From NCBI GenBank assembly GCA_964252035.1, contig OZ176200.1: a stretch of 64,000 bases of DNA; one strand, given 5' to 3'. Source of the stretch: Podarcis erhardii (taxonomy: Eukaryota). A model generated the notes under the pieces. That model was given only the letters and a program-made list of their open reading frames with translations, made no database searches and had not been told where the DNA came from. A program made the translations under genes and the position numbers. Shown here piece after piece: positions 13,506 to 60,760 of the stretch. The number at the start of each line of letters is the position of its first letter. The stretch's first letter is position 1.

Positions 13506-13816
13506 CTACAAAGTTGTCAAGTCTGTCTGATGCTCCTTGGAGACAGTCTGTGAGTGTTGGCTGGGGGCCGAGGAAGAGCTAGAGGACCGGCCCTTGGTGT
13601 TGGGCAGTTTGTGGTCTTTTTTCCACTTCATCCTCCTGTTCTGGAACCAGATCTTGATCTGGCGTTCGGAGAGACACAACGTGTGGGCGATTTCGATCCG
13701 CCGGCGCCGAGTCAGGTACCGGTTGAAGTGGAATTCCTTCTCCAGCTCCAGGACTTGCTGCCTCGTGTAGGCTGTCCTGGAGCGCTTCGGTTCTCCTCCG
13801 GTGTAATTAGGATTCA
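13506..13816 (-). CDS. HOXD4: Homeobox protein Hox-D4, coding exon 2 (homeodomain)
   Basis: Acceptor ctcag|TG at 13817/13816 restores [83 protein letters not shown], ending in the HOXD4-type C-terminus TDLTTL. Intron 13817-14365 (549 nt). Confidence 0.97.
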
Positions 13817-14225: not shown

Positions 14226-14365
14226 TACCTCGATTTCAACCCGCGTCGCGAAGCCTGGAAAGGACTTTGGCGGGGTGGGGTGAGGTGGGGTAATGAATCA
14301 AGAAGGGGGAGGCGGAGTGGGGTGGGGTGGGGTGGGCGAGGTGGGTAGCAGAAGGGGATGCTTAC

Positions 14366-14795
14366 CTGAGTTAACGTGGACTTTCTTCATCCAAGGGTAA
14401 ACCACCGCTGGCTGCTTCATTGCTCCTGCTGCTGTTGGTGGCGATGACCCGTTGGGGCTTTTGAGGCTGGGCTGCTGGTTGCAGGTCCTCGTGGCGGGCA
14501 TTGGAGGCGGGGGACAGTGCTCAGCCTGCCCGGGGAAGTGGCTCGCTGGGCCGGATTGCTCCTGCCCGTGACCCCGCGGCTGCACTGCCGAGCCCTGGGC
14601 ATTGCAACAACCGTAGGGCTGCTCGCTGTAGTTTGACCGTGGATAGATTCCCTGGTGCTGGAAGTCAGAGCCTTGCGAGGCACCGTAATAGTCTGAGCTT
14701 TGCTCAGCAAGGTAGCTGTTCTGCAGATATTCCTCGCAAGGGGGGAATTTGGGGTCCACATACTTAGAGTTCACCATATACGAACTCATGGCCAT
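14366..14795 (-). CDS. HOXD4: Homeobox protein Hox-D4, coding exon 1 (join 14795-14366 + 13816-13506, 246 aa)
   Basis: Starts [23 protein letters not shown] (paralog group 4 N-terminus) and contains the [11 protein letters not shown] hexapeptide region. Donor TCAG|GTAAG at 14366/14365, phase 1. Confidence 0.97.
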
Positions 14796-16049: not shown

Positions 16050-16155
16050 TGAAGTTTTTGCATCGACCATATATTCCCCTAGAATCGAATCTGTGACTAT
16101 GTAAACACCACACAAATTCGGTTCTACAGGGTATATATAGACAACGTAATAACAT
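16050..16155 (-). ncRNA. MIR10B: microRNA mir-10b precursor hairpin
   Basis: Exact reverse complement of miR-10b-5p UACCCUGUAGAACCGAAUUUGUG at 16111-16133 and of the 3p arm ACAGAUUCGAUUCUAGGGGAAU at 16073-16094. Canonical position just 5' of Hoxd4. Confidence 0.98.
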
Positions 16156-17552
16156 TTTGCTTTCGTCTACAGAGGGTGGGTAACAAAGGCAGCGTCACTG
16201 TAGCGTCGTGATCCCTCTGACTCGCTCGCGAGGAATTCATACTACTCTCTGTTGGGGTAAAGGTCTGAAATTATGGATTTGAAAAATATAATGATTTCAT
16301 AGGAAAGCATACCAAAAAAGTGTCATTTTTGTGACTTTGGTCTTTTTCAAGATGTAACGAGTTCTCACGACGGGTTTTTCAGATAATCTACGTGACAATA
16401 GCTCTGGATTCTTCAGCATTTAAAGCACTTGCGCTTAAAAAACACACCATTCAAATAATAACTGTACAGTTTCAATAAAAAGAAAGGCTGTCAGCTAATT
16501 TATTTTTTGTCAATAGCATGATGTTGATCTAAACAATCCGCCTTTCAATCCCATAATAAAACTCTTGATGCAAAGGGACCTTTATATAGGCGAAAGCTAA
16601 CTATTCGTTTCTGAAAACAACTAAATGGAATTATTTCTATTTCTATTTTTGTATTTTTACCTTGATGCCACTACCCTCAAGCTGAATATTCTCCTAACTG
16701 CGGAGAGTATCTGAGCCTTATAAAAAGAGGGGGGGGGGAACCTCCACACCACTGTCCTTTGGTTTTCATGCAATAGTGTTGATGGTGAAGGGCAGGGCAA
16801 GAGGTCATCTTAAATCATTTACAAACATATCCCAGCGTTTCATTATTTCTACTTTGTCGACGGCAACACACAGGATTCCAAAAGTTCATGCATTGTGGCT
16901 GACCCGGTTCCTCTGTGTTGTCTTGCGGTCAGCTCCCTTCCATTCTCCCTCTGTTGGGTATTCTAAGCAAACCAACTTGGGATAAATCAGAGCGAGAGTG
17001 AATGGGAATATATGTACGTGTCTGCGTGTGTGTACATATATGTATATGTGTATGTGTGTGTACACACATATATGTATCTATAGACATGTATGCATATATA
17101 TCATTAAGCATCTGTGAGCAAATGGCTTTTTAAGCAACGACCTGCTCCTTTTCATGGAATTAGGGGTGGCTTTTTCTTTCCAGAAGGTGGTCTCCTTGGG
17201 ACAGAAATGGAAGAGCAAGTGGATTACTTTACGGATTTCTGAATCAGTACCTGCTCTCTGAGTTGGCTAAAGAGGCATTCTTATTTCTAATGAGAAGAAT
17301 GCGTGGGTACTCCCTACTCTTGCTCCCTTTGATGAGTAAGTATTTAAGCAAGAAATGCAAAACGGTCCAATTCTACAGAATATACGGTTTCAAATGTTAC
17401 TTCTAGGGGAAAGCGGAATTAAGGGGTGGCCTGGGACAGGACTAATCGGAGAAAGGGCTTTCTTTAATTTAAACAAAACAAAACATTTTTTTTAAAAGAA
17501 TCGTTCGAATATTTTGTGCAATAGCCCAGATTTTCATATTTGTTAGACGCTG

Positions 17553-17569
17553 TGACCTGCGTTTCACCT
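17553..17569 (-). promoter_or_regulatory. DR5 retinoic acid response element 5' of Hoxd4
   Basis: Minus strand reads AGGTGA-AACGC-AGGTCA, 2.76 kb upstream of the Hoxd4 ATG. Matches the known mammalian Hoxd4 5' RARE half-sites and position. Confidence 0.87.
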
Positions 17570-20254
17570 TATTGCGCGACTTGCTCAGACAGGTCAAAGC
17601 CAAAGGAGTTATTGATGAACAAAAGCGTTAAACATTCACCTCGTGCTCAACTGCCCGTACAAATTCTTTTGATCCACCAGGCCGTTTTTGTATTCTGGTT
17701 CATAATCAGTATGCTGCAGCTAAGTTTAAGTAATATTTTTTAAAAGAAGAAGAAGGAAGGAAGGATAGAAAATGAAAAGGTGGTGCTTATTTTCTTGTTA
17801 AGTTTTAAGGCTGGCCAAAGAAAACTGAGGCAAGGGCAAAAAGGGGGGGGGGTATTTCAGTAGGAAGGAAGAAAATGTGGGAAATCCCAGTCACCCTCTT
17901 AGTGGTTTAAAGCCATCCAAAAGCCATACACAGCACAATATTGTGATTTTAAAACAGGCAGATCGATGTATCAGGCTGGGATTTAAAATTAGCAAAGTAA
18001 ATGGCTCAGAGCTAAGGAAGGAAAGCATAAAGGAGACAGAAAGATGTTGTGCCGAAAATAATCGCTTTTAGAGGTTGAGTAACATATGGTTATACTGGTT
18101 TCCCTTTTTTTCTAAATAGGGAGGTAATGTATTGTATCCCAGGACAGCAGGCTAGAACTCATGCTCCACATATAATTATGCCACATATACTTGCAACCAT
18201 TGAACTAATCATAGCCTTTCTTCTTTTCCCCTTTATTGAAATCCAACCCTCCCTCTCGTATTATTTTTACCTCCTGTTTCCCCTACGTTCAGACAGCAGT
18301 CTGTATCTGCTTTCTTCCAGTATTTCATATAAATGTCAACCACTCTATCTCGGGAACACTTCACTGACGCCTAACAATAACGTCATTAACACAGCCTTGG
18401 TTGCGATCCTATGCGTATTGACTAGGAGTGCACCTTTCCATTGCAAGCAGCAGGCCTTTATGCCCAAAATAAAAGGGGAGGAGATACAACAGCATTTAGA
18501 GCATAACTCCTCGTTGGAGCATTAGTTCATCCTCAAAGGCTGCAGTACCGAGAGGGCAAGCGCAATCCGTATTTTGGATCTCCACCAAAAGAGGAGCCAA
18601 CCAGTAGAAGTGCTTGCCCTGGTACATGATAGATTCAACATTTGCACAGGGAAACGCGGCATGACTTTATCCTGTTAAAATGCTAATCCTGCTCGTTAGC
18701 TGGAAAGAGCTTAAGAGAGGCACAAGATGGGCACCTTCACCTGCAATTATCTCCCCAGAAACTGCACAATCAGCGTTTGCTGTGATCTGCAGCTACAGAC
18801 CGCAGGAGGATGGGAGAGGGAGACAGAGAGAGAGAGAGCAAGCTTGAAGCCCCACGAGCCGTCCAGTACAAAACAGCCTTGCAGAAACATCAGAAACACA
18901 CCATCTCTGTTTACAAACTCAAACGTTGACAAGGCGATGTTTGCACACACGAAAAGGAGAGGGAAAAAAGTGCACTTACTGTAGACGCCCTTCCATTGTC
19001 CCGAACCTGTTGCAATGGGGGGAAAGAGGAGAAAGAAAATAAACAAAACCATTTCGTATTGTTGTTTTTCCATGTATAGATAGTTGGGGGGGGGCGGAAT
19101 GCACGCATTGCGTCTCTATTTAGCTATGAGAATGTTAAGGACACAGGCAGGCATTGCATATAAAGGTGACAAATCAACACAATCCCCCCTCCCAATTGCT
19201 GATTTGCCTCTTTTGTTAAATTCTTTTTGTAATAAAAGCCAGCCAGATTAAATATTTCAGTCAGAGTTATCATGTAATTGTATACGATCATCCTTACTGC
19301 TAGTTTCAACTATGTTTCTATAAAATGTTTTATCTGATAAAGATATAAAGGATTCTTCCTCCAACTGGGTTAATCCCAGAGTGACAGAAACCTTACCAGC
19401 GTATCCCTGAAGCTCCCTGGCCAGTATTTAGTCAGTAACCCGCTTGCTTAAAAATCTATACCATTTCCCCAACATGAACTTGTAAATATCATCATTATTA
19501 CAGTAAATCTATTTTATTGTTTACTTAAACAGATTTCCCTTTTTCTGTCTGTGTCTTTCTTCTCTTATTGTAACAAATAAATTCTACATTATCACCCACG
19601 TGGAGAGAGAGAGAGACTGTTTAAACAATGTTTTCAAAAAGAAACAACCAAGGTTGAGCTATTTTGCAAAACATCCCCTTCACTTTTGCCTGCGCTATCC
19701 CTGAGAAGGGCTGTATATACACCCAGACCAGCTTAAAGCAGGGCGCAATCATTCCATCGATGTATCATCTTATCTCTCGTTCCGTTCCTCCCTTCACTCT
19801 CCTTCTAGAATAACAGCCAGAACGCAGTGCCCTTGAAATCTCTGCAAATTAAACACGTAATGAAGGATCTACCGGCTTAAACCGAGGTTGGTTTCTTTCA
19901 CAAAATTAAAATTAAAACCGTCGACGTGCGATTTACTGACAGCTCTCTTAAAACTTGGAGCAAATCCAATGGAAACGCTATTCCTATAATACTTCCGGGC
20001 TTCCCTGGATCTGATCTTTTCATTCATATATACAGTTCCAGGGAACACTCAGACACACGGTCACTGGAGAGAGGGACTCGGTCACATATGGAGCGCAAGA
20101 AGAGACTTACTGTGAGCTTTGCCAAAGGGAAGAGGAAGGTACCCCCGGGAGAAGCAGAGGTCCTGGGCGCTTGGTTTCAGCCAGAGGTCTCCTGCCTAAC
20201 ACTTTCCCTGTCACTGCTCCCAGGAACTAAAGCATCTGCACTTGTATGCTCTTA

Positions 20255-20395
20255 AACTAATTTATGGTGGGAATTATATTTTGGCTTGTCAACTCTCAAG
20301 CCATAAAACAAAGTTTATTGGAATCACGTGCTTCGAAAGAGCCACTCAGGACTTATCTCGACGGAACAATAAATAACCTCTAGCTTTAAACTTTT
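20255..20395 (-). promoter_or_regulatory. Distal promoter-like block (probable Hoxd4/mir-10b upstream promoter; Hox5-promoter-like)
   Basis: CACGTG at 20325-20330, TTTTATGG and CATAAATT motifs, and a downstream GTAAGT donor at 20110. Lies 5.5 kb upstream of the Hoxd4 ATG, similar to the mouse P2 promoter distance. Confidence 0.6.
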
Positions 20396-20985
20396 ATTCA
20401 CTTATATAAAGAGGGCCTGGAAGGAAGGGGGGTTAAAGAGAAGGGGGGAAAGGGGGTAACCCCGCCACACATCCTGCGTTCTATGAAATTTAAAGTAGTC
20501 CAAAATAGCGAGGGCCAGGCACTGGAGGCCTTGCGTGGCTGTAGCGTTTAGGCCAGGCTCTTTTTATTAAAAATAATAATAATGAGTTGTGCCAGGACAG
20601 GCCCCAGTGGCAGTTTAGATCTCCCCTTTAATGAGGAAAGGAACGTGTGAATTTCGCTGTGAGTACCGATTCAAAATTTATTTGAATGAATATGTATGTG
20701 GAGTGGTGGGAGGGAGGGAGAGAAGGAGGGAAGGAGGGACGAATTTAAGCAACACCAAAGGCCACCACGTTTGTGGGATCCTCCCAGCTAGCCCACGCCC
20801 AGCCTCGTCTCTATGGTCAGGCCCCAAGCACTCGGGTTACGCGACCATCCAGACGGCTGCGATGCACACACAACTTTGGAGCGAATGGTGCCGTTTTACA
20901 GGATAAATAGTTCTGTTGTCTAGGGTTTGTCAGAGGAAGAACGTGTTTATCTATGTCTGTTTGCTAAGCAGCTACGGAAAGTGCT

Positions 20986-33307: not shown

Positions 33308-33477
33308 NNNNNNNNNNNNNNNNNNNNNNNNNNNNNNNNNNNNNNNNNNNNNNNNNNNNNNNNNNNNNNNNNNNNNNNNNNNNNNNNNNNNNNNNNNNNN
33401 NNNNNNNNNNNNNNNNNNNNNNNNNNNNNNNNNNNNNNNNNNNNNNNNNNNNNNNNNNNNNNNNNNNNNNNNNNNNN
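33308..33477. other. Assembly gap (170 N)
   Basis: Run of N. Confidence 0.99.
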
Positions 33478-35650: not shown

Positions 35651-35718
35651 CACATGACCAGGCGCAGCCAATGACGTGCCCAAATAGGTCATAAAAGGTC
35701 TATTACGAGTTGTAAATT
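35651..35718 (-). promoter_or_regulatory. Orphan Hox-type promoter cassette (Cdx/Abd-B sites, CRE, CCAAT, E-box)
   Basis: Minus strand TTTACAACTCGTAATA...TTTTATGACC...ACGTCATTGG-ctgcgcctg-GTCATGTG inside a CpG-rich region, with no Hox ORF downstream. Confidence 0.65.
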
Positions 35719-38278
35719 CTCTTCAAACAAAAAGGAATTTACTGCAATTCCTTGCGGATTTTTTTTTAAAACCCAGGCTGCTACAAACAGTGGGTTTTGT
35801 TTTCCTGGGTTCATTTCTTTCTGCCATCTCTCTCTGCTGTTTGTCTTTACGCGCTACCAAGGCTCACCACCACCACCTTTCTGTTGCCTTGGCCTGTCTC
35901 AGGGAGCAGTAGATCGGTGGGAATCTTCTGAATGATTGACGCAGCCCAGTCCTCAGCCCCCTTAACCCGGAGGCCAAACGCTGCCGAGTAGAGGCCCTGA
36001 TTCGATTCGGAAGCGTTTAGCCCAAACATAGGGGCCTGAACCCACACCCTACCACTTGCCTGTGAGCAACGCAACAGTGCGTAAAAGTCCATTTGCTGCG
36101 GGGGCGGGAGAAAGTCCAGCAGGCGAGGCCCCTTTTGCTAGGTCTACATTATGTCTAGGCCGCTGGGCTTTAGAATTGCACTGCCTCACTCCGACCCCCC
36201 TTGCCCTGCGCTGGGAAGGCTGAAGGGGTTGGGAATGGGGAACATCGCAATGAAACTCAGCTCCTGCAAATCTCGAATCTACTTTACTCCAAAGGCTCGT
36301 CACGTTCCGGAGCTCCCGAAAGCTCCGTTTGGAGTAGCAAATTAAAACCACCCGCTTGCGCGAATTAATGAGCGTCTCTTCCTTGTTGCAGGAAAAAGCC
36401 TCCCCAAAAGCTTTTCCGGCCCTGGCTGCGGATGGAACGTTGACGAGAGACAAAGCCTCCCTTGGCTGCGGATCCATTGATTTGTAACGTTCTAGAACGC
36501 GCTGGGAGTTCTGCGCTCTGGAGGAGTAACCAGGCGTTCTACCGGATCTGCAATGGCAAAAGAATTCGAGACATGGAAGGAAGGGTGGACGAGGGAGACA
36601 AAGCATGCCTCCAGTGTTTAAAACGGCCTCCCCTTTTTGAACTTTAAATCGAAACCGACATAAATACACCCAGGGACGTTTATTCTGGTTCCGTTTTCTT
36701 TCATGCAGCAATTGGGACTGACTGACTGCACACTTAAGGGTACTCACTTAAGGCCCCCCTGGACTCAGTTGCATTATTTGGATGTTCAGTGCGGTTCACT
36801 TTCTTCCGCTGAAGATAAGCTGGAAGTGGTGGGGAAATTTGCCGTTGTCTGTAGTGTGGGATCCAAACTCTGTTCACTTGAATTTTGTTGCTTCCCTCCA
36901 TAACCCAAAGGCCGTCTTTAATAACTGGCGAATTCATCCAATTATTTATGGCCATTTATGTGGGATTAGGGTTTAAGCGCCTTCTGTTGGAAAGCGACGT
37001 TCCGGGCGGCTTGACAGGTTCAGACTCACTTGAGATTTGCTTCCAAGTCAGCTATGTCACTGGGGCCGGTTTGAATATCTAAGATGTGGGTTTCTCGCCT
37101 TGAAGGACCGCATAGCGACTCCGCAAGCTTGATTTCCACCCAATTCCAAAATGGCCGCTTCCTCGTAAATAATCAGGATCGACAAACTCTAGGACAGTGT
37201 TATGTTTGATGGTATTAATTAGATTCGTCATTCATGATGAATTGTGGATGTTAATATATTGATTAAATACATTATAAAGCATACTGCATTGCAATGTGCA
37301 CGTATATACAAATATATTCAGGAGAATGTGCGCAGCAAATATTCGGATTTCCCTCCTCCAGAATCAATTGTCTTCAGACATTTTAATCCAATTTTGGAAT
37401 TAGCGTTGGATAAATATCGGATAATACTTTTTTCTAGTTGAAAGGGATTATGGTTTAAGATGCTCAAAATGACCCCTCCCTCCGCTAGGGCTCAATTGAA
37501 CTAAGGCTTTGCCCTTCGTTGCAAAGGTATTGCTACTTTACCAATAATGTCTGCAAATATTTAACTTGTATATTTACATTTAAAATAAAATCAAATCACC
37601 ATCCCTTCTATATAGGTTTCTGGAAGTTTGCTTGTCTTAGACCCGCATAACCAATCCCAGACTGACCACTGAGACGTTTTGCCGCATTTATGCAAATCAA
37701 TGCACCAAATTGTTTTGCTTCACAGTTTTTGCCGCAGTTCCTCTACGTGAACGGGTTCCCAGCCCACTATGGCGCTTGTAGAGGAATGCGGTGGCCAAGG
37801 AAGGCGTTTCCGGCGGGGAGGGGCTATTTTCTGAATTCGAAAAGAGCCTCGAAAATTATAGGCGCTGAAAGTATATTCTGCTCTCTTCTTAGCTAGCTGA
37901 TTTCACAGCTAAAATAATTAGACCAGAGCGAATGGTAACACAAACATGCACAAAGCAAGCAAAACAAAATGAACAAAATGATCCCTTTCTCACCCTCCGT
38001 GTGTGCGTATGTAGGTGTGTGTATGTCTATAGAGGAATCTTCTAGTTAAGGCTAAATCCTCCGGATTCTGGTTAGATGAGAGCAGACTTTGACCTGGTAT
38101 CTGTTCACTCATTTCGCCTTATTCCACTTCACCCTCTCTTTAAAGATTTAAAGTGAATTTGTTTCGGGGGCTTTGATATGGGCAAACAAGAAACTATTGA
38201 CTGTCTCCAAGACTGATAATAAGAACAATGGGAGAGATTCAGCCACAGGACTTCAACACATTTCAGTTCTACTGGTCT

Positions 38279-38339: not shown

Positions 38340-40597
38340 AAAGAAGTCCTTAGGACTTACAGTGACCTAATTTTGGTTGATAAAAGTGGTCCAGTTAACA
38401 CGCCTTGCAGCGAGAAAAAGGCTCGATTAACTGGTGGACAGGGTACCAAAACGGTGATGGAGGATTGATGCAAATATAATGCCTCTCAGTTTTGAGAACT
38501 CTGTTGTTCTACATGTTACATATAAAAGGAGCTACCAAGAGGTTGCTGATTTCCTGCCCTTTGGGGTCTTTCGGGGTTTCTGTCTACAGTCACCCATCTA
38601 ACAGGATTTGGTCCCGCGGAAAAGCGACAGAACTGGGCTTAGTTGTAACTAACTGAACTCGATTTCTTATCCACTACTAATTTTTGATGAAGTGTGGCTT
38701 CTTCTGCATATATGGGCCACTTCATACACAATTCCTCTTAGGCCTCTGTGTGTGGTTTCTGGGGGCTGCGGGGGGAGGGCTCCCCATACCATTTGAAGGC
38801 CGTTATTTCCAGCGACAGACAATTTGAGGTTTCTTACGTGAGAAGGCTCTACCTTTTAATTATCTGCATGATTTAAGATTGAGAAGCCACCTCTTTGAAA
38901 TTGCCAGGAGAATTCTGGTGGTTTCCTTGCACTTTGATGTGGAGATATGATTACCTGATTCAAGCCAGCGCCCGTGTGAAAGTCCTTAATAAATCCCGTT
39001 GAAGTGAATGGGATTTGATAGCATTAAGGGCAGGCAAGATCACCCAAAAGCCGAGAAATAAAATCACACACACACCCCCTCAGTTTTCTCACCAACTAAG
39101 CGATGTGTGTGTTATTTTATTTTATTTTTTTTACTGGGGAGAAAATGTCGAAAATAAAGCTAATAAAGTTAATGTGTAAAAAAAAATGTGTAAGCCAGTG
39201 GGAATCTCACGCGTTATTCAGAACCTGGGACAGTTTTTTGTTGTTTTGCTATCGCTCCATGAAGTGTTTTCAGTCATCTGCAGGACTTCCATGCTTTGAT
39301 AGTCTTAAATTGCCCGTTTTCTGCTGAATAACACCTACAACAACAAACCTACCACAGACATTGGACAAAATCCATAGAACGCTGGCACGCCTGGACCCCA
39401 CTGGAATCAATGGAGTTCTGATCGCAAGTGTACTGCACACGCGGACCGCAATCCAGCGATGAATTAAGTACTCTTGCACAGGTGCCTTATTTATAGTGCT
39501 TAAGCACTCTGATCTTCATCCTGGGATTATAGGCATTAACAATGCATAGGCCCGTTATATCTTGGGATTCTATGAACTAATGAACCCAAATAGCGGTGTG
39601 TGTGTCCCCCTCGCAAGTTATATCCATCTGCAGCAATTTCAGAGTTGGCTTCTGCAGCGGCGCAGGGCTGAATCCCATCCCTGCCGTTAACTCAGACCTC
39701 GTTCCAATCCCGTTGCAGCCACTAATACCGCTCAGTCTCATCTCCTTTTTACTGTGGGGATAACACGGACCTCCTGCCTTACAGTGCTGTTGCATGTATG
39801 GCACAGACAGCATGTGAAAGCCTACTGCTCAGGGTGATTTTTATTACTCCTGTAAACACTAATTATCGCGACAGCTAAAGTCTGACCAATATGAGGATGA
39901 GAAACTGCACCTCTCCAAATGATGGGAAGAACACGAAGACAGTCACTGCTGCACACACGATTTTTAAAATAATAATAATTCAGCCATAGTGTTAGTAGTA
40001 AGAACGGCAAGTTTTTTTTTATAAATATAGCACAGGCACCTCTGGGAAATCCTTAAAGTTTTAGATGGCCAATTGACAAAATAATGCTACTAATCAAACT
40101 TCCGCTTTACTTCCAACCCAGACTAGAGATATGCAGGGATGTTGCACGAATGACATAGCATAGTGGGGGGGGGGGGTCTTGCTGAATCCAGGTAGCCCGC
40201 CATGCTTTCTTCAGAGAGCGGCCTGAGCAGCTTACATCAAGCAAGGCATGAAGAAATGGAAAGAGGCATCTCGTGCTGTTTATCTAGTAATATGGTAGAC
40301 TACTCCCTTATGACGGGGATGGGTGGGGAAGGTTTCTGCAACACCAGGCTAGGACTTTCCATTAATTTTAAACCTCCTTGCTTTGATGGGTGTCACACTG
40401 TGCTCACTGCAGCTTACTCGCAAGTGTCCATAGGACTGCAGCCTCTGGGACCCAGAGCAGAGAAAGCTGGTTGCCCCCTTAAGCCCCTCACTGAGACCAA
40501 CATTGCTCCATTGCTTCGTATTGAATTTATTTGCGATTAATTTTAAACTGGACTGGGACCGTGCCATATTCGGGATAGAAACATCACGTGCCTTGTA

Positions 40598-41874: not shown

Positions 41875-42176
41875 TCAATTCGTCGGGCCTTCTGCTCCTT
41901 CTTCTAGAAGGTCCTCCTGGACTTCTGTCTTGGCCTCCTCTCCTTCCTTCCCCTCCTGCCTGCCGGCTGGGAACTTGTCTTTGTTGTTCTCCTTTTTCCA
42001 CTTCATCCTCCTGTTCTGAAACCAGATCTTGACCTGCCTCTCCGTGAGTCCGAGGGCATGGGAGACCTCGATCCGCCTTTTCCTGGTCAGGTAGGGGTTA
42101 AAAAGGAACTCCTTCTCCAGCTCGAGAGTCTGGAAGCGGCTGTAGGTCTGTCTCCCTCTCCGCCTACCAGGAGCTG
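41875..42176 (-). CDS. HOXD8: Homeobox protein Hox-D8, coding exon 2 (homeodomain); alternative start at 42173
   Basis: TAG-CAG tandem acceptor, then [70 protein letters not shown]. Stop TGA at 41877-41875. The intron contains an N gap. Confidence 0.97.
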
Positions 42177-42802
42177 CTATTTGAGACGAAACAAAAAAGC
42201 ACAGCGTTTCTTTAAAACGAAACGAAACCCCACAAATAAACTGAAAACAAGTAGGACTCCCCCCACCCCGCGCGCACACGACGCGTGCTTAGAGATCTGG
42301 AGAACATCCTAAACTGGTTTACTGGGAAATAAATCCCACGGGGGTCTTCGTGACGCCCTAGGGAATAAATGTCATCTAACTCCGTGGGATGTGCTTTCTA
42401 CTGCATGACCAGAGGCTGAGGCAAGTCTATTCGATCCAGCTGTATTCCAGCGAACAAATTTAGCGCAGGCACGTTTATCCAGAAATAAATCCCACTGCAC
42501 TCAGCAGGGCTTCCTCTCCAGGGAGGAGGTTGAGGAATCCCCTTTAAATCAAAGTACTCCGAGTTATCTGGTCTAGGGTTGTTTGCCTCGCTTGCGCTTA
42601 ACGCGCCACAGCAGCACCTCCCTGAAAGGAGACTACTTCTAAAGACTGGTCGAATTATTTGTTTGTTTGTTTGTTTCATCCCACTATTCATAACATTTGT
42701 GGCTTAACGGCCTTCAGTCCGTGGTGGGGTTGATTATGGGAGGGGGTGGAGGGAATAGTGGAAAGTGTGCTGGAACCTGGAAGTTATAACAGCACCGCAA
42801 TA

Positions 42803-42949
42803 NNNNNNNNNNNNNNNNNNNNNNNNNNNNNNNNNNNNNNNNNNNNNNNNNNNNNNNNNNNNNNNNNNNNNNNNNNNNNNNNNNNNNNNNNNNNNNNNNN
42901 NNNNNNNNNNNNNNNNNNNNNNNNNNNNNNNNNNNNNNNNNNNNNNNNN
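42803..42949. other. Assembly gap (147 N) in the Hoxd8 intron
   Basis: Run of N. Confidence 0.99.
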
Positions 42950-43133
42950 AGGGATAGATGCTGGGTTGTAATTTGTTTTGGAGAGGAAAGTCTTGAGACT
43001 CACAGAGGGAAAATGGGGCTGCTGTAACAAAGGCAGGAGAGGAAAGTAAGAAAGAGAAGAAAGAAAGGAGGCAGCGACTGGGTTGCCGCGGCGCCAAAGG
43101 CAAAGGGAAGCGGGGGTTTCGCTCGCGTCCAAC

Positions 43134-43734
43134 CTTGTGGTCTCATCCAGGGGAACATTGGAGAAGGAGACGCGCCCTGATTTAAGTGCTCTGGGTCCTC
43201 GCCAATATTAGCACTGGACGATTTACAGTCAGGATACTGGACCAGCTCGGCCTCTTGGTGTGTCGTAAAAATCGGCTGTCTCTGTAAGTTATCGTATCCG
43301 TAAAACTTGGCAGGCTCTCCCGGACAAGGCAGGCCGGCGCAGGGGCCCTGCGGGGCCAGAGGCGGCGGCGGCGGCGGCGGCTGGTGGTGGTGGTGGTAGG
43401 CTGAGGGGCTTCCTCCGGCTAGGTGCCCGTGGTGCCCGTGGTGCTGCTGGTGATGGTAGTATTCCGGGCCGCTGCCGCCCGAGCCAGGCCCAGGTGGGGG
43501 CTGCGGAGGGGGGAAGCCCGAGGTGGCGGCGGCGGCGGCGGCCGCTGCAGCAGCGCTGTTCCCGTAGAGCAGGGCGGCCGCGGCCGCGGCGGGCGCAAAG
43601 TGACAGTCGTAGTAAGCGGGATTGATGGGCTGCTCGCCCCCTCCTCCTCCTGCTGCTCCTGCCGCCGCAGCTGCCGCCGCCGCCGCCGCCGCTTTGTACT
43701 TGGAGTAGAGCGGATTGACGAAGTAGGAGCTCAT
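43134..43734 (-). CDS. HOXD8: Homeobox protein Hox-D8, coding exon 1 (join 43734-43134 + 42176-41875, 300 aa)
   Basis: MSSYFVNPLYSKYK start, followed by YYDCHFAP, GEPAKFYGYDNLQRQPIFTT and MFPWMRPQ. Donor CAAG|GT at 43134/43133, phase 1. Confidence 0.96.
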
Positions 43735-44575: not shown

Positions 44576-44844
44576 NNNNNNNNNNNNNNNNNNNNNNNNN
44601 NNNNNNNNNNNNNNNNNNNNNNNNNNNNNNNNNNNNNNNNNNNNNNNNNNNNNNNNNNNNNNNNNNNNNNNNNNNNNNNNNNNNNNNNNNNNNNNNNNNN
44701 NNNNNNNNNNNNNNNNNNNNNNNNNNNNNNNNNNNNNNNNNNNNNNNNNNNNNNNNNNNNNNNNNNNNNNNNNNNNNNNNNNNNNNNNNNNNNNNNNNNN
44801 NNNNNNNNNNNNNNNNNNNNNNNNNNNNNNNNNNNNNNNNNNNN
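44576..44844. other. Assembly gap (269 N) upstream of Hoxd8
   Basis: Run of N. Confidence 0.99.
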
Positions 44845-51750: not shown

Positions 51751-51992
51751 CTAGTCCCCTTTATTCCCTTTTTCCTTGTTCATCTTTTTCATTTTCATTC
51801 TTCGGTTCTGAAACCATATTTTAACCTGTCTCTCGGTCAGGTTTAAAATCCTAGCCACTTCGTAACGGCGGTCGCGGGTGAGGTACATATTAAAGAGGAA
51901 TTCCTTTTCCAGTTCCAGAGTTTGGAATTTTGTGTAAGGGCAACGCTTTTTCCTGGTGGAACGAGCGTGAATCCAGTTCGCGGCGGGATTAT
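51751..51992 (-). CDS. HOXD9: Homeobox protein Hox-D9, coding exon 2 (homeodomain)
   Basis: Acceptor ctccag|AT gives [74 protein letters not shown]...KGD. Intron 51993-52414 (422 nt). Confidence 0.97.
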
Positions 51993-52414
51993 CTGGAGAA
52001 GGGAGAGCAAGAAGGGAGGGAGAGAGAAGGTCAGGGTTCGGAGGGAGAAGAGGGGCAGGCATTGAAGTAGGGGAGAGGGTTGGGGAGGGGAGAAAGGTCG
52101 TTAAATTAATTTAACGGAGGATGCCTGCTCTTTTCACAATTGAGGAGGAATTATCATAAAACCTTGAATGGCCCGGTCTGTTTACTGTACAAATGATGTC
52201 TTCTTGATGGCCGTAGGTGGTTATGGGGAGCCTTTTTTATGGCTGCTTGTTGCCGCTTGCGCTCGAGTAGGCGTCTAGACGTTTTTATAGGTTAGTAAAA
52301 CTATCGGTTTTGCACATTGGAGCCTTACAGGTTGGGGTAATAAATCAAAGCGGGTGCAATTTCTTTTCTTTCTCTCTCTGGCTCGGATTTTTTTTATTTT
52401 TTTTTTAAACTTAC

Positions 52415-53369
52415 TTGGGTCAAGTTGCTGCTGAGGCTTCTCCTCCTTCAGATCGCTGCTGGGGCTAGCATTGCGGCTGCAACCAGACGCTGGCTTGGCC
52501 GGGGTGGCGGTACTGCCGTTGCTGCTGCTGCTGGTGATATTGCTGGTGGCTGCAGCTACGGCGGCCGCAACCGGGTGAGAAGAACCGTTGCTCACTGTTG
52601 CTGCCGCCGCCGCCTTCTCGCGGGGCTCTGCCAGGAAGGAATTGCACGTGTACTCGGGCCCATTGACCCCCGAGGGCTCCCTAGACGGCGCGCACTCAGT
52701 TCTTTTGGAAGGAGAATCGGCGCTGCAAGACGAGGAGGAAGAGGAAGAGGAGACGGTGGCAGAGGAGGAGGAAGGAGAGGGCCCCACCGGACCGGTGGCG
52801 GCGGCGGCGGCGGCGGCTGCCCCGCTCTCCGGCTTGACGATCCCGTAGTGGCGCGCGCTGGAGGAGCCACCGCCGGCGCCGTTGGAGGCGATGCTGGTCG
52901 TCGCCGCTGCAGCAGCCGCAGCAGCCGCGGCACTAGCGGCGGAGACGTTGCTGTTGCCTCCGCCGCCGTTGCCGGGGCTGCTGGGGAAAGAGGCGAAGGG
53001 CTCGATCCAGGAGCGCACGTATCTGCCTCCGCCGCCCTCGCCCGGTCCGCCTAAGTGCGGCTGGGGCATGTAAGGGTGGTAAATGCCGGGCATGGGCGCC
53101 GGAGGCTGAGGGTGCACGGCGGGCCACGAGGCTGGGAAGACGGCCGACTTGGGCGCGAAGCTGCAGGAGGAGAAATCCGAGCCCTCGGCCACCACACCTG
53201 AGGATGGCCTGGGGGTCGCATGGTGACCTGCCTGCAGGAACCGGGCAGCCCCTCCGACGCCGCCGACGCCTCCTCCTGCTCCTCCGACGCCGCCACCGTA
53301 CACTTCCTCGCTGTCGTGGCCTATGAGGGAATCGACATAGTAGTTACTGAGGGTGCCGCCGGTCGACAT
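52415..53369 (-). CDS. HOXD9: Homeobox protein Hox-D9, coding exon 1 (join 53369-52415 + 51992-51751, 398 aa; 408 aa from in-frame ATG at 53399)
   Basis: [18 protein letters not shown] start, with [17 protein letters not shown] and QQQLDP motifs. Donor CCAA|GTAAG at 52415/52414. Confidence 0.95.
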
Positions 53370-53497
53370 TTTTGGGAGGCTCCCTCCGTAGCAGGGCATA
53401 TGATGGGGGGAAGGCAAAAAAGGTTACTCTGTTAACTGTAGATGATCGCCTGGCCCGGAGAACAATCGTAGTATTTTGCAGGCGGCCAGGCTCAGCC

Positions 53498-57936: not shown

Positions 57937-58214
57937 TTATGAGAAGGTCAGATTGGCGGTCAGTTCTCGGATCCGGTTCTCTCTGCTCATCTTCTTGAGC
58001 TTCATTCTGCGGTTTTGAAACCATATTTTGACCTGCCTGTCAGTGAGGTTTACGCTCTTACTGATCTCTAGGCGGCGCTCTCGAGTGAGATACATATTGA
58101 ACAAGAACTCTTTCTCTAATTCCAGTGTTTGATGTTTAGTATAGGGACACCTCTTCTTTCTGCCACTCTTTGCAGTTAACCAATTGCTGGTTGGAGTATC
58201 AGACTTGATTTCCT
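57937..58214 (-). CDS. HOXD10: Homeobox protein Hox-D10, coding exon 2 (homeodomain)
   Basis: Acceptor ctag|AG gives [92 protein letters not shown]. Confidence 0.98.
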
Positions 58215-59795
58215 CTAGCAACATCAAAGGAGAAGGAAAGAAGGAAGGAAGGGAAAATAAGAAAGAAAAAGAAAAAAGAAACACCTCAGTCTGTTATAGA
58301 GTACCCTTGGCCATGAACCTACTATATCCATTGTGTCTGGCAGATATGGTGGCTTGTGGGTATTAAACATTGCTAACGGAGGTGTGTACATTGGGGCAGG
58401 GCGGGTTTTTTTTTAATATAATGATAATGATACAAAAAATGGTCTCCACATTCGAGTTAAACAATGCCAGCAGCAACACTATTTTCCACTCTCTGGGTTA
58501 TTTCTGCAGCTTTCCCAAACATTATCTCTATGCATTTTCCCTGCTAATCCACATATTTCAAAATAGCCTGTGACATTGGGAGCAATATGAATACTGTCAT
58601 CTTCCCACTGGTTCGCATTTTAGTGGATGTGAACTGAACAAACCAACCCCCGCCTTATAAAGCCACTTGTTTGGGAAATGCCTCAGTTAAAAATAGTACT
58701 ATCCCCAGTCATGTTGAAAGAGATTCATCTGCATCACTCATGAAATTAAGCAAACACCCAAGGCGCGGGGGGGGGGGGGAGTGGCCTTTTTAGTCCTCAA
58801 CTAACACCAATATGGAAGGGGGCGAATACCTAAAAATCAACTGTATTTATCTTTTTCACTTTTAATTCTCTATCTCCTATTAGATGCAAATGCCAGACCT
58901 GGGCTGAATAAACATGGTCTGTATTGTTCTGCACTTACTAGGAGTAACCAATGCACAGTAGAGATTGACAAGTTAATTTTTACTAAAGGCATGGTTGCTG
59001 AGGGGCCCCCGCCCCGCTCTTCCACCATATTCTCCTCTCTCCAAACGAAGCCCCTGCTGTCCTCCCCCATCTTGAAATAAACAATGCAGTTCCTTCCATT
59101 ATTTCATAACAACCTTCAAAGCCTAGTGAAATTAGGAGACCCAAACTTGTTTTATCTGTAGCACCTTATCCCAAATTTAGACTTCCTTCGAAGAAAGGGC
59201 CTTGCCTTATTCTCATCATACTTTATATGGGCTCTGCGGCACCTCCCTGTTTTATTTTATCTCGTCAAAAGAAAAACAGCAACCCCACAACTTTTTATTA
59301 CCATGCTTAGCAATCGACTGTGCTCTTCACAGAGAAGATCTACAGGAAATATTTGATCCCAATTTGACCAAGGAGGGGTGGGGGAGAGTAACAGTGGGTG
59401 TAATTTAAGAACCTCTAATCTGAAGGAGCTGCTGGAGCAGTTATAGTGCAACAGCCTTGGCAAGAGAGAAACGAAAACACCCTTTTCCTGGCTGAATCTC
59501 TGGGATTCAAAAGGCATGAAACGATGGGTGTCACCAGCATCGTGGCCAGGTCCTAAGGCATCCATGCCCTTCTATTTCCTTTTTGTTTTTCCAATTGCAA
59601 AAACAACACATACCCAGCACCTGCAGCAGCAGAAAGAGGTGACGGGGGGGGGGGACCCTGTCTGCTGAGCAGTTATGGCTGAGCTTAAAGCATTAAATGC
59701 TCCTGTGGTTTACGAGACTGGCGTGCCCAAGTTAGTCTGCCACCACGTTCGGGTATCTGCCCCCCACAGCCGCCAACTTCTGCGATCATACCGAC

Positions 59796-60597
59796 CTTTG
59801 CTTTCCTTCTCTTGGGTTTCTGGGCTGGAAACGGAGGCTTCAGCCAGGCAGCTCCTGTCGTCTTGCAGCGTGGACTTAGACTCGGGACTTTCCACTTGAG
59901 AGACTTTGGCAGAGTTGTCTGAATGGTGGCTGCTGGTGCTGCTGCTGGTGTTGGTGGCGGCGGCGGTGGCGGCGCTGCTGCTGTTGGGGTTTTCATTCAT
60001 TTTCTTCTCCATCGGAAGTTGCGAAGCTATCTGCGGTTTGGAAGCGCCGCGAGGGTTTAACTGCAACATGACAGTTGAACTCGTTTCGGGGCTGTTATGG
60101 TACTCTTGGGTTTTCCCAGTGGCGTAGGTCTGGCTGAGCCTGAAATATCCTGGGACGGGGACCTCGGGGTTTTCAATGGAGCACGAGTCAGAGACCAGCC
60201 TCTGGTATGAAGGGACGTCGGACGAAGACACCAGCTTGGAGCGCTTATCGGAATACATGCAGCAATTGGTTTCTTCCTTAATATTTGTCGTGAAGGAGCA
60301 GGTGGGGACCTGCTGAGTAACAGGTTGCTCTATTCGGCAGGACCTGTTCGGATCAGTCCAGTTGTCTACTTGAGGTATATAAGGGTGTACATTCATACCC
60401 ATATTTTGGTGGTTGACTTCTCTCTTGGCCAGAGACGGTAGAAGTCCACAGGTTTGCATCCCATAAGTCCCAATGTCTGTGCTAGGTGGCATGTACATAC
60501 TGGCGCTGTTGGAATAGAAACTATCGCTCCTGCAGGCACTGATCAAGGAATCGACTAGGAAAGTGTTGGCGGCAGGAGAGCTGTTGGGAAAGGACAT
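59796..60597 (-). CDS. HOXD10: Homeobox protein Hox-D10, coding exon 1 (join 60597-59796 + 58214-57937, 359 aa)
   Basis: [29 protein letters not shown] start and [14 protein letters not shown] motif. Donor AAAG|GT at 59796/59795. Confidence 0.97.
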
Positions 60598-60693
60598 TTT
60601 GGGGAGGAATTTGAAGAAGAGAGATTGTGTCCTTTGTAGGCTGACATCTCTACGAAAACATTCCCTGTGTAATTGTGGATGCCTCTGCACAAC

Positions 60694-60760
60694 CACATGA
60701 CAGCTAAGCCAATGAGATTTGAAAATGGCCTTGAGCCGCTACCTCCCCGCCGGTCACGTG
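60694..60760 (-). promoter_or_regulatory. Hoxd10 proximal promoter (E-boxes, CCAAT, YY1-like)
   Basis: CACATGAC at 60694-60701, CCAAT at 60709-60713, AAAATGGC at 60722-60729 and GTCACGTG at 60753-60760. Confidence 0.65.

What the first reader, a model, noticed from the sequence alone, without database searches (positions are those of the whole stretch)
20100..20410. Possible ghost promoter of the lost Hoxd5 gene, reused for Hoxd4/mir-10b
Seen on the minus strand, in order: GTTTAAAGCTAGAGGTTA, GAAGCACGTGATTC, TTTTATGG, TATAATTCCCACCATAAATTAG, then a GTAAGT donor at 20110, with no Hox ORF. From recall, the human HOXA5 promoter/leader has the same ordered motifs: GTTTACCTCTAGAGGTCA, AAAGCACGTGATTC, CATAATTCATCATAAATTG. 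Known: tetrapods lack Hoxd5, cartilaginous fishes retain it, and mouse Hoxd4 has a distal promoter about 5 kb upstream. Inference: the distal Hoxd4 promoter is the surviving Hoxd5 promoter and leader, now spliced to downstream exons.
Basis: partly seen in the sequence, partly recalled or inferred. Interest (0 to 1): 0.7.

Follow-up and report, generated by a model that had tools for sequence, protein, structure and literature searches.

The report
Ancient Hoxd4/miR-10b promoter, not Hoxd5's
This lizard sequence is the deeply conserved upstream promoter and first non-coding exon of the Hoxd4/miR-10b transcript; sharks, which still have Hoxd5, carry the same element downstream of that gene, so it is not a leftover of the lost Hoxd5 promoter.

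Summary
They are far from chance: the block is 88.5% identical to rhino over 218 bp and 79% identical to sharks over 183 bp.

It lies at the position of the mouse Hoxd4 upstream promoter P2, which also makes pri-miR-10b. The predicted start is 4177 nt (lizard) and 4114 nt (rhino) from the Drosha site, against 4066 nt published for mouse.

The "ghost Hoxd5 promoter" part fails. In two sharks that keep Hoxd5, the element lies about 1.55 kb 3' of the Hoxd5 stop, and Hoxd5 has its own leader. Paralogous copies lie 1.35-1.85 kb 3' of Hoxa5 (frog, ray, lizard) and Hoxb5 (shark, platypus), with a weak copy 3' of a lamprey Hox5. A Hox5-leader profile finds every real Hox5 leader (E down to 1e-82) but nothing in this window. 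The window holds no Hoxd5 coding relic.

The Hoxa5 resemblance reduces to one shared 22-nt composite, ACTGG-N10-CACGTG, which brackets Hox5 in every cluster examined.

HoxC was not tested.

The parts
20097..20414 (-). Whole conserved element: promoter plus predicted first non-coding exon and donor
   Evidence: An nhmmer profile of the element family hits window 20414-20097 at E 1.8e-72. Orthologues: rhino L006 4568-4870, gar L009 5683-5946, sharks L001 2861-3182 and L002 12599-12918.
20369..20401 (-). HoxD-specific upstream block (GTGAATAAAAG...GGTTATTTAT), which contains an AATAAA
   Evidence: Conserved in lizard, rhino and both sharks but not in the HoxA/HoxB copies; only partly kept in gar. 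Function unknown. Whether its AATAAA serves shark Hoxd5 polyadenylation is untested.
20325..20346 (-). Composite site AGTGGCT-N9-CACGTG; the E-box CACGTG is at 20330-20325
   Evidence: A[CG]TGG-N9-11-CACGTG occurs 16 times in 273 kb of held Hox DNA (0.4 expected). All hits are on the coding strand, and all are either Hox5 leaders (7) or copies of this element (9).
20301..20307 (-). TTTATGG, a Cdx/posterior-Hox-type site
   Evidence: Lies exactly +23 from the E-box in 10 of 10 copies across HoxA, HoxB and HoxD. The factor assignment comes from general knowledge of Cdx/Hox motifs and was not tested.
20285..20291 (-). TGACAAG, a TALE (Meis/Prep)-like half site
   Evidence: TGAC[AG] lies at +39 to +41 in 9 of 10 copies. 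The factor assignment is inferred.
20273..20280 (-). TATA-like box (AATATAAT)
   Evidence: An AT-rich TATA-like box lies at about +50 in every copy's sequence. The strict regex matched 5 of 10, and the others read TTATATA or GTATATT at the same place.
20111..20250 (-). Predicted non-coding exon 1 (the start near 20250 is inferred, not observed)
   Evidence: The start is placed about 30 nt after the TATA-like box. From there to the Drosha site is 4177 nt in lizard and 4114 nt in rhino, against 4066 nt published for the major mouse P2 start. The exon body is not conserved between clusters, but its length is.
20105..20110 (-). Splice donor GTAAGT
   Evidence: A donor-like site lies at +186 to +248 from the E-box in 10 of 10 copies. 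The background chance is 0.051 per 100-nt window, which gives 1.3e-4 for three independent clusters. Its use in lizard RNA was not observed.
16066..16140 (-). mir-10b hairpin; the Drosha 3' cut equivalent is at 16071
   Evidence: Rfam RF00104, 75.3 bits. The mouse P1-start primer from Phua 2011 matches 16071-16050 exactly.
14298..14795 (-). ORF holding Hoxd4 coding exon 1 (ATG at 14795)
   Evidence: ORF list. The nearest Hoxd4 is Zootoca vivipara, at 99% in the homeodomain exon.
13506..13808 (-). Hoxd4 homeodomain exon

Best explanation
Window 20414-20097 (minus strand) is the lizard orthologue of the upstream Hoxd4 promoter, called P2 in mouse, together with its short non-coding first exon. 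In mouse, transcripts from this promoter carry miR-10b in an intron and are both the pri-miR-10b and a Hoxd4 mRNA precursor. The core is a fixed array: a CTGGCT box, an E-box (CACGTG), TTTATGG at +23, TGACA at +40 and a TATA-like box at +50. A start is expected near 20250, and a conserved GTAAGT donor ends an exon of about 140 nt at 20111.

The element is older than the vertebrate cluster duplications. The same array, with a donor at the same distance, lies 1.35-1.85 kb 3' of Hox5 in HoxA, HoxB and shark HoxD, and probably in lamprey. When bony vertebrates lost Hoxd5, its coding sequence and its own promoter vanished without detectable trace, while this neighbouring promoter stayed under strong constraint.

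Shown here: sequence orthology and paralogy, position, and the motif and donor architecture. Inferred: that it fires in the lizard, the exact start, the factors that bind it, and what exon 1 splices to.
For: Position: the E-box lies 4259 nt from the Drosha site and 5.5 kb from the Hoxd4 ATG. Mouse P2 lies 5.2 kb from the coding region and 4066 nt from the Drosha-cut end (PMC3185001). The rhino orthologue lies 5.2-5.4 kb upstream of the Hoxd4 ATG at 88.5% identity, and the predicted start-to-Drosha distances are 4114 nt (rhino) and 4177 nt (lizard).

Sharks: the element lies at L001 2874-3170 and L002 12612-12790, 1549 and 1568 nt after the end of an intact Hoxd5 CDS named Hox-D5 by NCBI.

Paralogues: frog HoxA L003 12639-12919, ray HoxA L005 12793-13076, lizard HoxA L008 13636-13853, shark HoxB L004 13074-13325 and platypus HoxB L007 13200-13353, with nhmmer E from 1e-24 to 1e-67. 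The lamprey copy is at L010 13990-14036, E 0.006.

Architecture: TTTATGG at +23 in 10 of 10 copies and a donor in 10 of 10. The copies group by cluster: 75-98% identity within D, 91-96% within A, 61-79% between clusters.

Literature consistent with promoters at the paralogous places: Hobbit1, a coding-strand RA-induced transcript between Hoxb5 and Hoxb4 (PMC4510006), and a distal Hoxa3 exon in the Hoxa4-Hoxa5 intergenic region (PMC2868907).
Against: There is no transcript evidence from this lizard or from any non-mammal. I had no mouse genomic sequence, so identity with P2 rests on position, on the published distances and on a rhino orthologue, not on an alignment to the mapped mouse start. 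Folberg 1997, the mapping paper, is not held. The links to Hobbit1 and to the distal Hoxa3 exon are positional inferences. HoxC was not examined. The lamprey copy is only weakly significant on its own.
Confidence: 0.85

Rival explanations
1. One reading: the element is the promoter and leader of the lost Hoxd5 gene, kept and re-used to drive Hoxd4/miR-10b.
For: The lizard element and Hoxa5 leaders share a CACGTGAT box and an ATAATTC..CATAAATT box in the same order. A gap-tolerant chaining score against the frog Hoxa5 leader is slightly raised (z 3.1).
Against: In two sharks the element lies 3' of an intact Hoxd5, which has its own leader. That leader aligns to the Hoxa5/Hoxb5 leaders at z 14.9 and E 1e-68 to 1e-82. 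The element also lies 3' of Hoxa5 and Hoxb5. Chaining against the real shark Hoxd5 leader gives z 0.0, and the unrelated Hoxd8 leader gives z 3.4. The Hox5-leader HMM gives E 7.4 at the finding.
Confidence: 0.02
2. Deep serial homology: the element is the original Hox4 promoter and is related to the Hox5 proximal promoter through the ancient tandem duplication that made Hox4 and Hox5. The resemblance the reader saw would then be real but paralogous. This concerns origin and does not conflict with the best explanation.
For: The composite A[CG]TGG-N9-11-CACGTG is found only at Hox5 leaders and at this element in 273 kb of Hox DNA: 16 hits against 0.4 expected, and none at Hox2, 3, 4, 6, 7, 8, 9 or 10 promoters. 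E-box-anchored profile similarity upstream of the E-box is z 5.3. Both have an AT-rich box 50-70 nt after the E-box. The lamprey has both.
Against: Similarity stops at the E-box: z is -0.6 and 0.2 downstream. The HMMs of the two families do not find each other. The pattern and the anchored test were chosen after I saw the similarity, so the statistics are optimistic. A shared binding site for one factor complex, acquired independently, explains the same data.
Confidence: 0.2
3. The block is not a promoter but an enhancer, a boundary, or a 3'-end (polyadenylation/termination) element of the upstream gene.
For: In sharks it lies about 1.5 kb after the Hoxd5 stop, and the HoxD copies begin with a conserved AATAAA. 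No transcript data were obtained here.
Against: It is kept at 88.5% identity between lizard and rhino although Hoxd5 is gone. It has a TATA-like box and a positionally conserved donor in all ten copies. Capped mouse transcripts start at the equivalent distance from miR-10b (PMC3185001). The AATAAA block is absent from the HoxA/HoxB copies.
Confidence: 0.07
4. It is a promoter, but its main products are long Hoxd3 isoforms or a non-coding RNA and not Hoxd4 mRNA.
For: Distal Hoxa3 exons lie in the Hoxa4-Hoxa5 interval (PMC2868907). Hobbit1 in HoxB is described as non-coding (PMC4510006). The splice acceptor used by exon 1 is unknown here.
Against: In mouse, P2 transcripts were shown to include Hoxd4 coding exons and miR-10b (PMC3185001).
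Confidence: 0.15

Closest known systems
Mouse Hoxd4 upstream promoter P2 / pri-miR-10b promoter (Folberg et al. 1997, cited in Phua et al. 2011, PMC3185001)
   Same: Same strand and same place: about 4.1-4.2 kb 5' of the miR-10b Drosha site and 5.2-5.5 kb 5' of the Hoxd4 ATG. It is followed by a short non-coding exon with a donor. A mammalian orthologue at that position is 88.5% identical.
   Different: Function is shown only in mouse. Here it is a sequence orthologue in a lizard, with no transcript data.
Hox5 proximal promoter/leader (Hoxa5, Hoxb5, shark Hoxd5)
   Same: Shares the composite ACTGG-N10-CACGTG and an AT-rich box some 50-70 nt further on.
   Different: The rest does not align. 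The true Hox5 leader has ATTTACGACTGG, CCCATATTTGG, TACGTAG and CCACAAATCAA boxes and abuts the Hox5 ATG. This element lies 3' of Hox5 and coexists with that leader in every cluster examined.
Hobbit1 (HoxB4-B5 intergenic transcript; De Kumar et al. 2015, PMC4510006) and pri-miR-10a
   Same: It is a coding-strand transcript arising between Hoxb5 and Hoxb4, where the HoxB copy of the element lies (L004, L007).
   Different: I did not map the Hobbit1 start onto the HoxB copy. The link is positional only.
Paralogous conserved non-coding sequences of Hox clusters (Matsunami et al. 2010, cited in PMC3595034)
   Same: Non-coding blocks conserved between paralogous Hox clusters since the two rounds of genome duplication.
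   Different: That paper is not held, so I could not tell whether this element is one of its three four-cluster CNSs. I tested A, B and D only.

Membership tests
Hoxd4 P2 / pri-miR-10b promoter | Lies about 4.07 kb 5' of the miR-10b Drosha cleavage site and about 5.2 kb 5' of the Hoxd4 coding region, on the Hox strand | tested here: met
   E-box to Drosha site is 4259 nt. Predicted start to Drosha site is 4177 nt (lizard) and 4114 nt (rhino), against 4066 nt in mouse. The E-box is 5.5 kb from the ATG.
Hoxd4 P2 / pri-miR-10b promoter | Sequence orthology to the mammalian block at the P2 position | tested here: met
   Rhino L006 4571-4784, 88.5% over 218 bp, E 5e-74. The mouse sequence itself was not available.
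Hoxd4 P2 / pri-miR-10b promoter | Capped transcripts start here | not testable with these tools
Hoxd4 P2 / pri-miR-10b promoter | A first non-coding exon is spliced from a donor downstream of the start | tested here: inconclusive
   GTAAGT at 20110-20105 is conserved in rhino and sharks, and a donor lies at the same distance in all ten copies. Its use was not observed.
Hox5 proximal promoter/leader | Lies immediately 5' of a Hox5 coding exon, or of its relic | tested here: not met
   The window has no Hox5 coding relic. In sharks the element is 3' of Hoxd5, not 5'.
Hox5 proximal promoter/leader | Matches the profile of Hoxa5/Hoxb5/Hoxd5 leaders | tested here: not met
   The leader HMM scores true leaders at E 1e-45 to 1e-82 (the lamprey leader at 2e-20). 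The finding scores E 7.4, and the best hit in the window is E 2.4.
Hox5 proximal promoter/leader | Similarity specific to paralogue group 5 and not shared by other Hox promoters | tested here: inconclusive
   Whole-element alignment is no better than to the Hoxd8 and Hoxd10 leaders. The 22-nt composite, however, is specific to Hox5 leaders and this element.

The most novel reading that the evidence does not exclude
The P2-type promoter and the Hox5 proximal promoter are serial homologues, both descended from the promoter of the ancestral Hox4/5 gene. On this reading P2 is the original Hox4 promoter, with mir-10 in its first intron since before the vertebrate genome duplications. The ACTGG-N10-CACGTG composite that brackets Hox5 in every cluster is the surviving trace, and possibly the handle by which Hox4 and Hox5 share enhancers.
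Probability: 0.2. Interest if true: 0.6.

Novelty: new member of a known kind. Interest (0 to 1): 0.4.

Why it matters
It settles a tempting evolutionary story. After Hoxd5 was lost, no trace of its promoter or coding sequence was detected, and what looks like a Hox5-style promoter is the neighbouring Hoxd4/miR-10b promoter, which was there all along. It also shows that this promoter, studied only in mouse HoxD, belongs to a family with fixed motif spacing and a positionally conserved first-exon donor. The family sits 3' of Hox5 in HoxA, HoxB and HoxD from shark to mammal, and probably in lamprey. That gives a concrete, testable candidate for the promoters of pri-miR-10a/Hobbit1 and of the distal Hoxa4/Hoxa3 transcripts. 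It also yields one specific shared site to mutate in order to ask how Hox4 and Hox5 are co-regulated.

Tried and rejected
- Hoxd5 relics: tblastn of shark Hoxd5, chimaera Hoxd5, frog Hoxa5 and shark Hoxb5 against the window found nothing in the Hoxd4-Hoxd8 gap (best E 0.12). Window homeodomains as queries also found nothing there.
- True Hoxd5 leader relic: the leader HMM's best hit in the window was E 2.4 at 22565-22534, which is not significant.
- Look-ups that failed: the coelacanth Hoxd4 (P0059) and Mustelus Hoxd5 isoform X3 (P0121) were not on record.
- Papers: Folberg 1997 is not held. Phua 2011 gives no P2 exon-1 primer and no supplement is held.
- A second GCACGTGAT at window 40583-40591 lacks the architecture.
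- HoxC could not be reached because no Hoxc5 id appeared among the listed hits.
- Spliced models: I searched Hox proteins exon by exon by reference and left out any joined exon model.
- I used no human sequence and did not touch the N runs.
- The only typed DNA queries were the 22-nt mouse primer printed in PMC3185001 and a 9-nt motif.
Full report
**What the window is.** The window is a HoxD cluster on the minus strand.
- Hoxd10: exons at 59710-60696 and 57937-58284.
- Hoxd9: 52275-53417 and 51751-52062.
- Hoxd8: 43000-43734 and 41875-42279.
- A gap of about 27 kb without any homeobox follows.
- mir-10b lies at 16066-16140 (Rfam RF00104, 75 bits).
- Hoxd4 has its ATG at 14795 and its homeodomain exon at 13506-13808.

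The nearest Hoxd4 is that of Zootoca vivipara (99% in the homeodomain exon), so the genome is a lacertid lizard or a close relative. Other agents' notes on this genome say the same. Three N runs (33308-33477, 42803-42949, 44576-44844) were left untouched.

**The observation.** No Hox ORF or homeobox relic lies between Hoxd4 and Hoxd8.

**It is the P2 promoter region.** Phua et al. 2011 (PMC3185001) place the mouse upstream Hoxd4 promoter P2 5.2 kb from the coding region. [quoted passage not shown]
- Their P1-start primer matches the window exactly at 16071-16050.
- The E-box of the finding is 4259 nt upstream of that site.
- A start placed 30 nt after the TATA-like box is 4177 nt upstream in the lizard and 4114 nt in a rhinoceros orthologue.
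- The rhino block (L006 4571-4784) is 88.5% identical to the lizard over 218 bp and lies 5.2-5.4 kb 5' of the Hoxd4 ATG.
- Gar has the element as well (L009 5683-5946, E 1e-36), with mir-10b between it and Hoxd4 and no Hoxd5 within 10 kb.

**It is not Hoxd5's promoter.** I fetched Hoxd4 and Hoxd5 loci from two sharks.
- The gene 5' of Hoxd4 in both is Hoxd5. Its product begins MSSYFLNSF..., has the hexapeptide IYPWMKKMH, and NCBI names it Hox-D5.
- All named Hox-D5 hits in two searches came from cartilaginous fishes.
- The lizard element matches the sharks at L001 2874-3056 and L002 12612-12790 (78-79% identity, E 1e-31 to 3e-36). The GTAAGT donor is conserved too.
- These positions are 1549 and 1568 nt after the end of the Hoxd5 coding sequence.
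- Hoxd5 has its own leader just before its ATG. That leader is plainly paralogous to the Hoxa5 and Hoxb5 leaders (chaining z 14.9; blastn E 2e-27 and 2e-78).

**The same element lies 3' of Hoxa5 and Hoxb5.** Copies occur in frog HoxA (L003), ray HoxA (L005), a cordylid lizard HoxA (L008), shark HoxB (L004) and platypus HoxB (L007).
- Each lies 1353-1853 nt after the Hox5 stop, and each cluster also has a separate true Hox5 leader.
- A profile of seven copies finds exactly those copies in all held DNA, plus the three fetched later, at E 1e-24 to 1e-82. It finds no Hox5 leader.
- A profile of five true Hox5 leaders finds all true leaders but nothing in the window better than E 2.4. The finding itself scores E 7.4 on the E-box alone.
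- Plain local alignment of the element against Hox5 leaders gives z 0.6-1.9, no better than against the Hoxd10 leader. Against the region 3' of frog Hoxa5 it gives z 8.4 (lizard) and 13.3 (shark).
- A gap-tolerant chaining test gives z 3.1 against the frog Hoxa5 leader, z 3.4 against the Hoxd8 leader and z 0.0 against the real shark Hoxd5 leader.
- A lamprey Hox5 locus has the leader (E 2e-20). It also has, 2.65 kb 3' of Hox5, a weak copy of the element core with the same motif order (E 0.006).

**Anatomy.** Taking the E-box as position 0, the layout is as follows.

| Feature | Position | Copies |
|---|---|---|
| CTGGCT box | about -16 | shared |
| TTTATGG | +23 | 10 of 10 |
| TGAC[AG] | +39 to +41 | 9 of 10 |
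| TATA-like AT-rich box | about +50 | seen in all; strict regex matched 5 of 10 |
| Donor-like site | +186 to +248 | 10 of 10 |

- The sequence between the TATA-like box and the donor is not conserved between clusters.
- The chance of such a donor in a 100-nt window is 0.051, or 1.3e-4 for three independent clusters.
- The copies group by cluster (75-98% identity within D, 91-96% within A, 61-79% between clusters), as expected for paralogues from the cluster duplications.

This is the signature of a promoter with a short non-coding first exon. Lizard coordinates are given under parts.

- The CTAGAGGT match is peculiar to the lizard: rhino, gar and sharks differ there.
- One feature is truly shared. 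The composite A[CG]TGG-N9-11-CACGTG occurs 16 times in 273 kb of Hox DNA (0.4 expected). All hits are on the coding strand, and all are either Hox5 leaders (7) or copies of the element (9). None lies at a Hox2, 3, 4, 6, 7, 8, 9 or 10 promoter.
- Anchored on the E-box, the two family profiles are alike upstream (z 5.3) but not downstream (z about 0).
- I chose this test after seeing the pattern, so it is a lead and not a proof. It could mean deep serial homology of the Hox4 and Hox5 promoters, or a shared factor site. In either case the two sites coexist and bracket Hox5, so the resemblance does not show that one descends from a lost gene's promoter.

**No Hoxd5 remains.** Hox5 proteins find nothing in the Hoxd4-Hoxd8 gap (best E 0.12), and neither does the leader profile. 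Between the block at 35692-35761 (orthologous to shark L002 3727-3797, 5' of Hoxd5) and the element at 20402, no shark-lizard similarity was detected. The gene and its promoter have decayed beyond recognition.

**Limits.**
- Mouse genomic sequence and Folberg 1997 were not available.
- HoxC was not tested.
No human contig was used.

**Literature context.**
- Hobbit1, a coding-strand RA-induced transcript between Hoxb5 and Hoxb4 (PMC4510006), fits the HoxB copy by position only.
- A distal Hoxa3 exon in the Hoxa4-Hoxa5 interval (PMC2868907) fits the HoxA copy by position only.
- Matsunami et al. 2010 reported three CNSs shared by all four clusters (cited in PMC3595034). I could not check whether this is one of them.

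**Verdict.** The identification as the distal Hoxd4/miR-10b promoter is supported. The ghost-of-Hoxd5 origin is refuted by position in genomes that keep Hoxd5 and by profile tests. The element is a lizard member of a known promoter, and it belongs to an old paralogous family. Interest is moderate.

Noticed in passing
window 17527-17662 (minus strand): A highly conserved block between the element and mir-10b: 91% identity to rhino and 85% to sharks. It holds a DR5-type retinoic-acid response element. Short paralogous matches lie between Hox5 and Hox4 in frog and ray HoxA (L003 17901-17940, L005 20003-20042) and in shark HoxB (L004 20949-20987). It is probably the known Hox4 5' / DE-RARE family.
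   Followed up: partly
window 16794-16847 (minus strand): Another block conserved with rhino (86% over 79 bp) and sharks (about 80%), between the RARE block and mir-10b. Function unknown.
   Followed up: partly
There it lies between Hoxd8 and Hoxd5, about 6.2 kb 5' of the Hoxd5 ATG. It also weakly matches frog HoxA between Hoxa7 and Hoxa6 (L003 2397-2494, E 2.5e-5). So it too predates the loss of Hoxd5-7 neighbours.
   Followed up: partly
window 40583-40591 (minus strand): The only other GCACGTGAT in the window, about 1.3 kb 3' of the Hoxd8 stop. It lacks the TTTATGG/TGACA/TATA architecture, so it is probably unrelated.
   Followed up: yes
L010 16617-17611: The lamprey Hox5-Hox4 interval holds a tandem array of about 24-nt units, each with a CACGTG E-box: some 40 E-boxes in 1 kb.
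   Followed up: no
P0001 (Cricetulus griseus 'Hox-A5', 222 aa) and P0121 (Mustelus Hox-D5 isoform X3): The hamster model joins the Hoxa5 C-terminal half to a Hox4-type homeodomain exon. The shark isoform replaces the Hoxd5 N-terminus with an upstream exon. They are either annotation artefacts or signs of read-through splicing between neighbouring Hox genes.
   Followed up: no
L001 10001-28028: The Mustelus Hoxd4a gene model spans 18 kb and runs up to the start of Hoxd3, which suggests annotated transcripts shared between Hoxd4 and Hoxd3.
   Followed up: no
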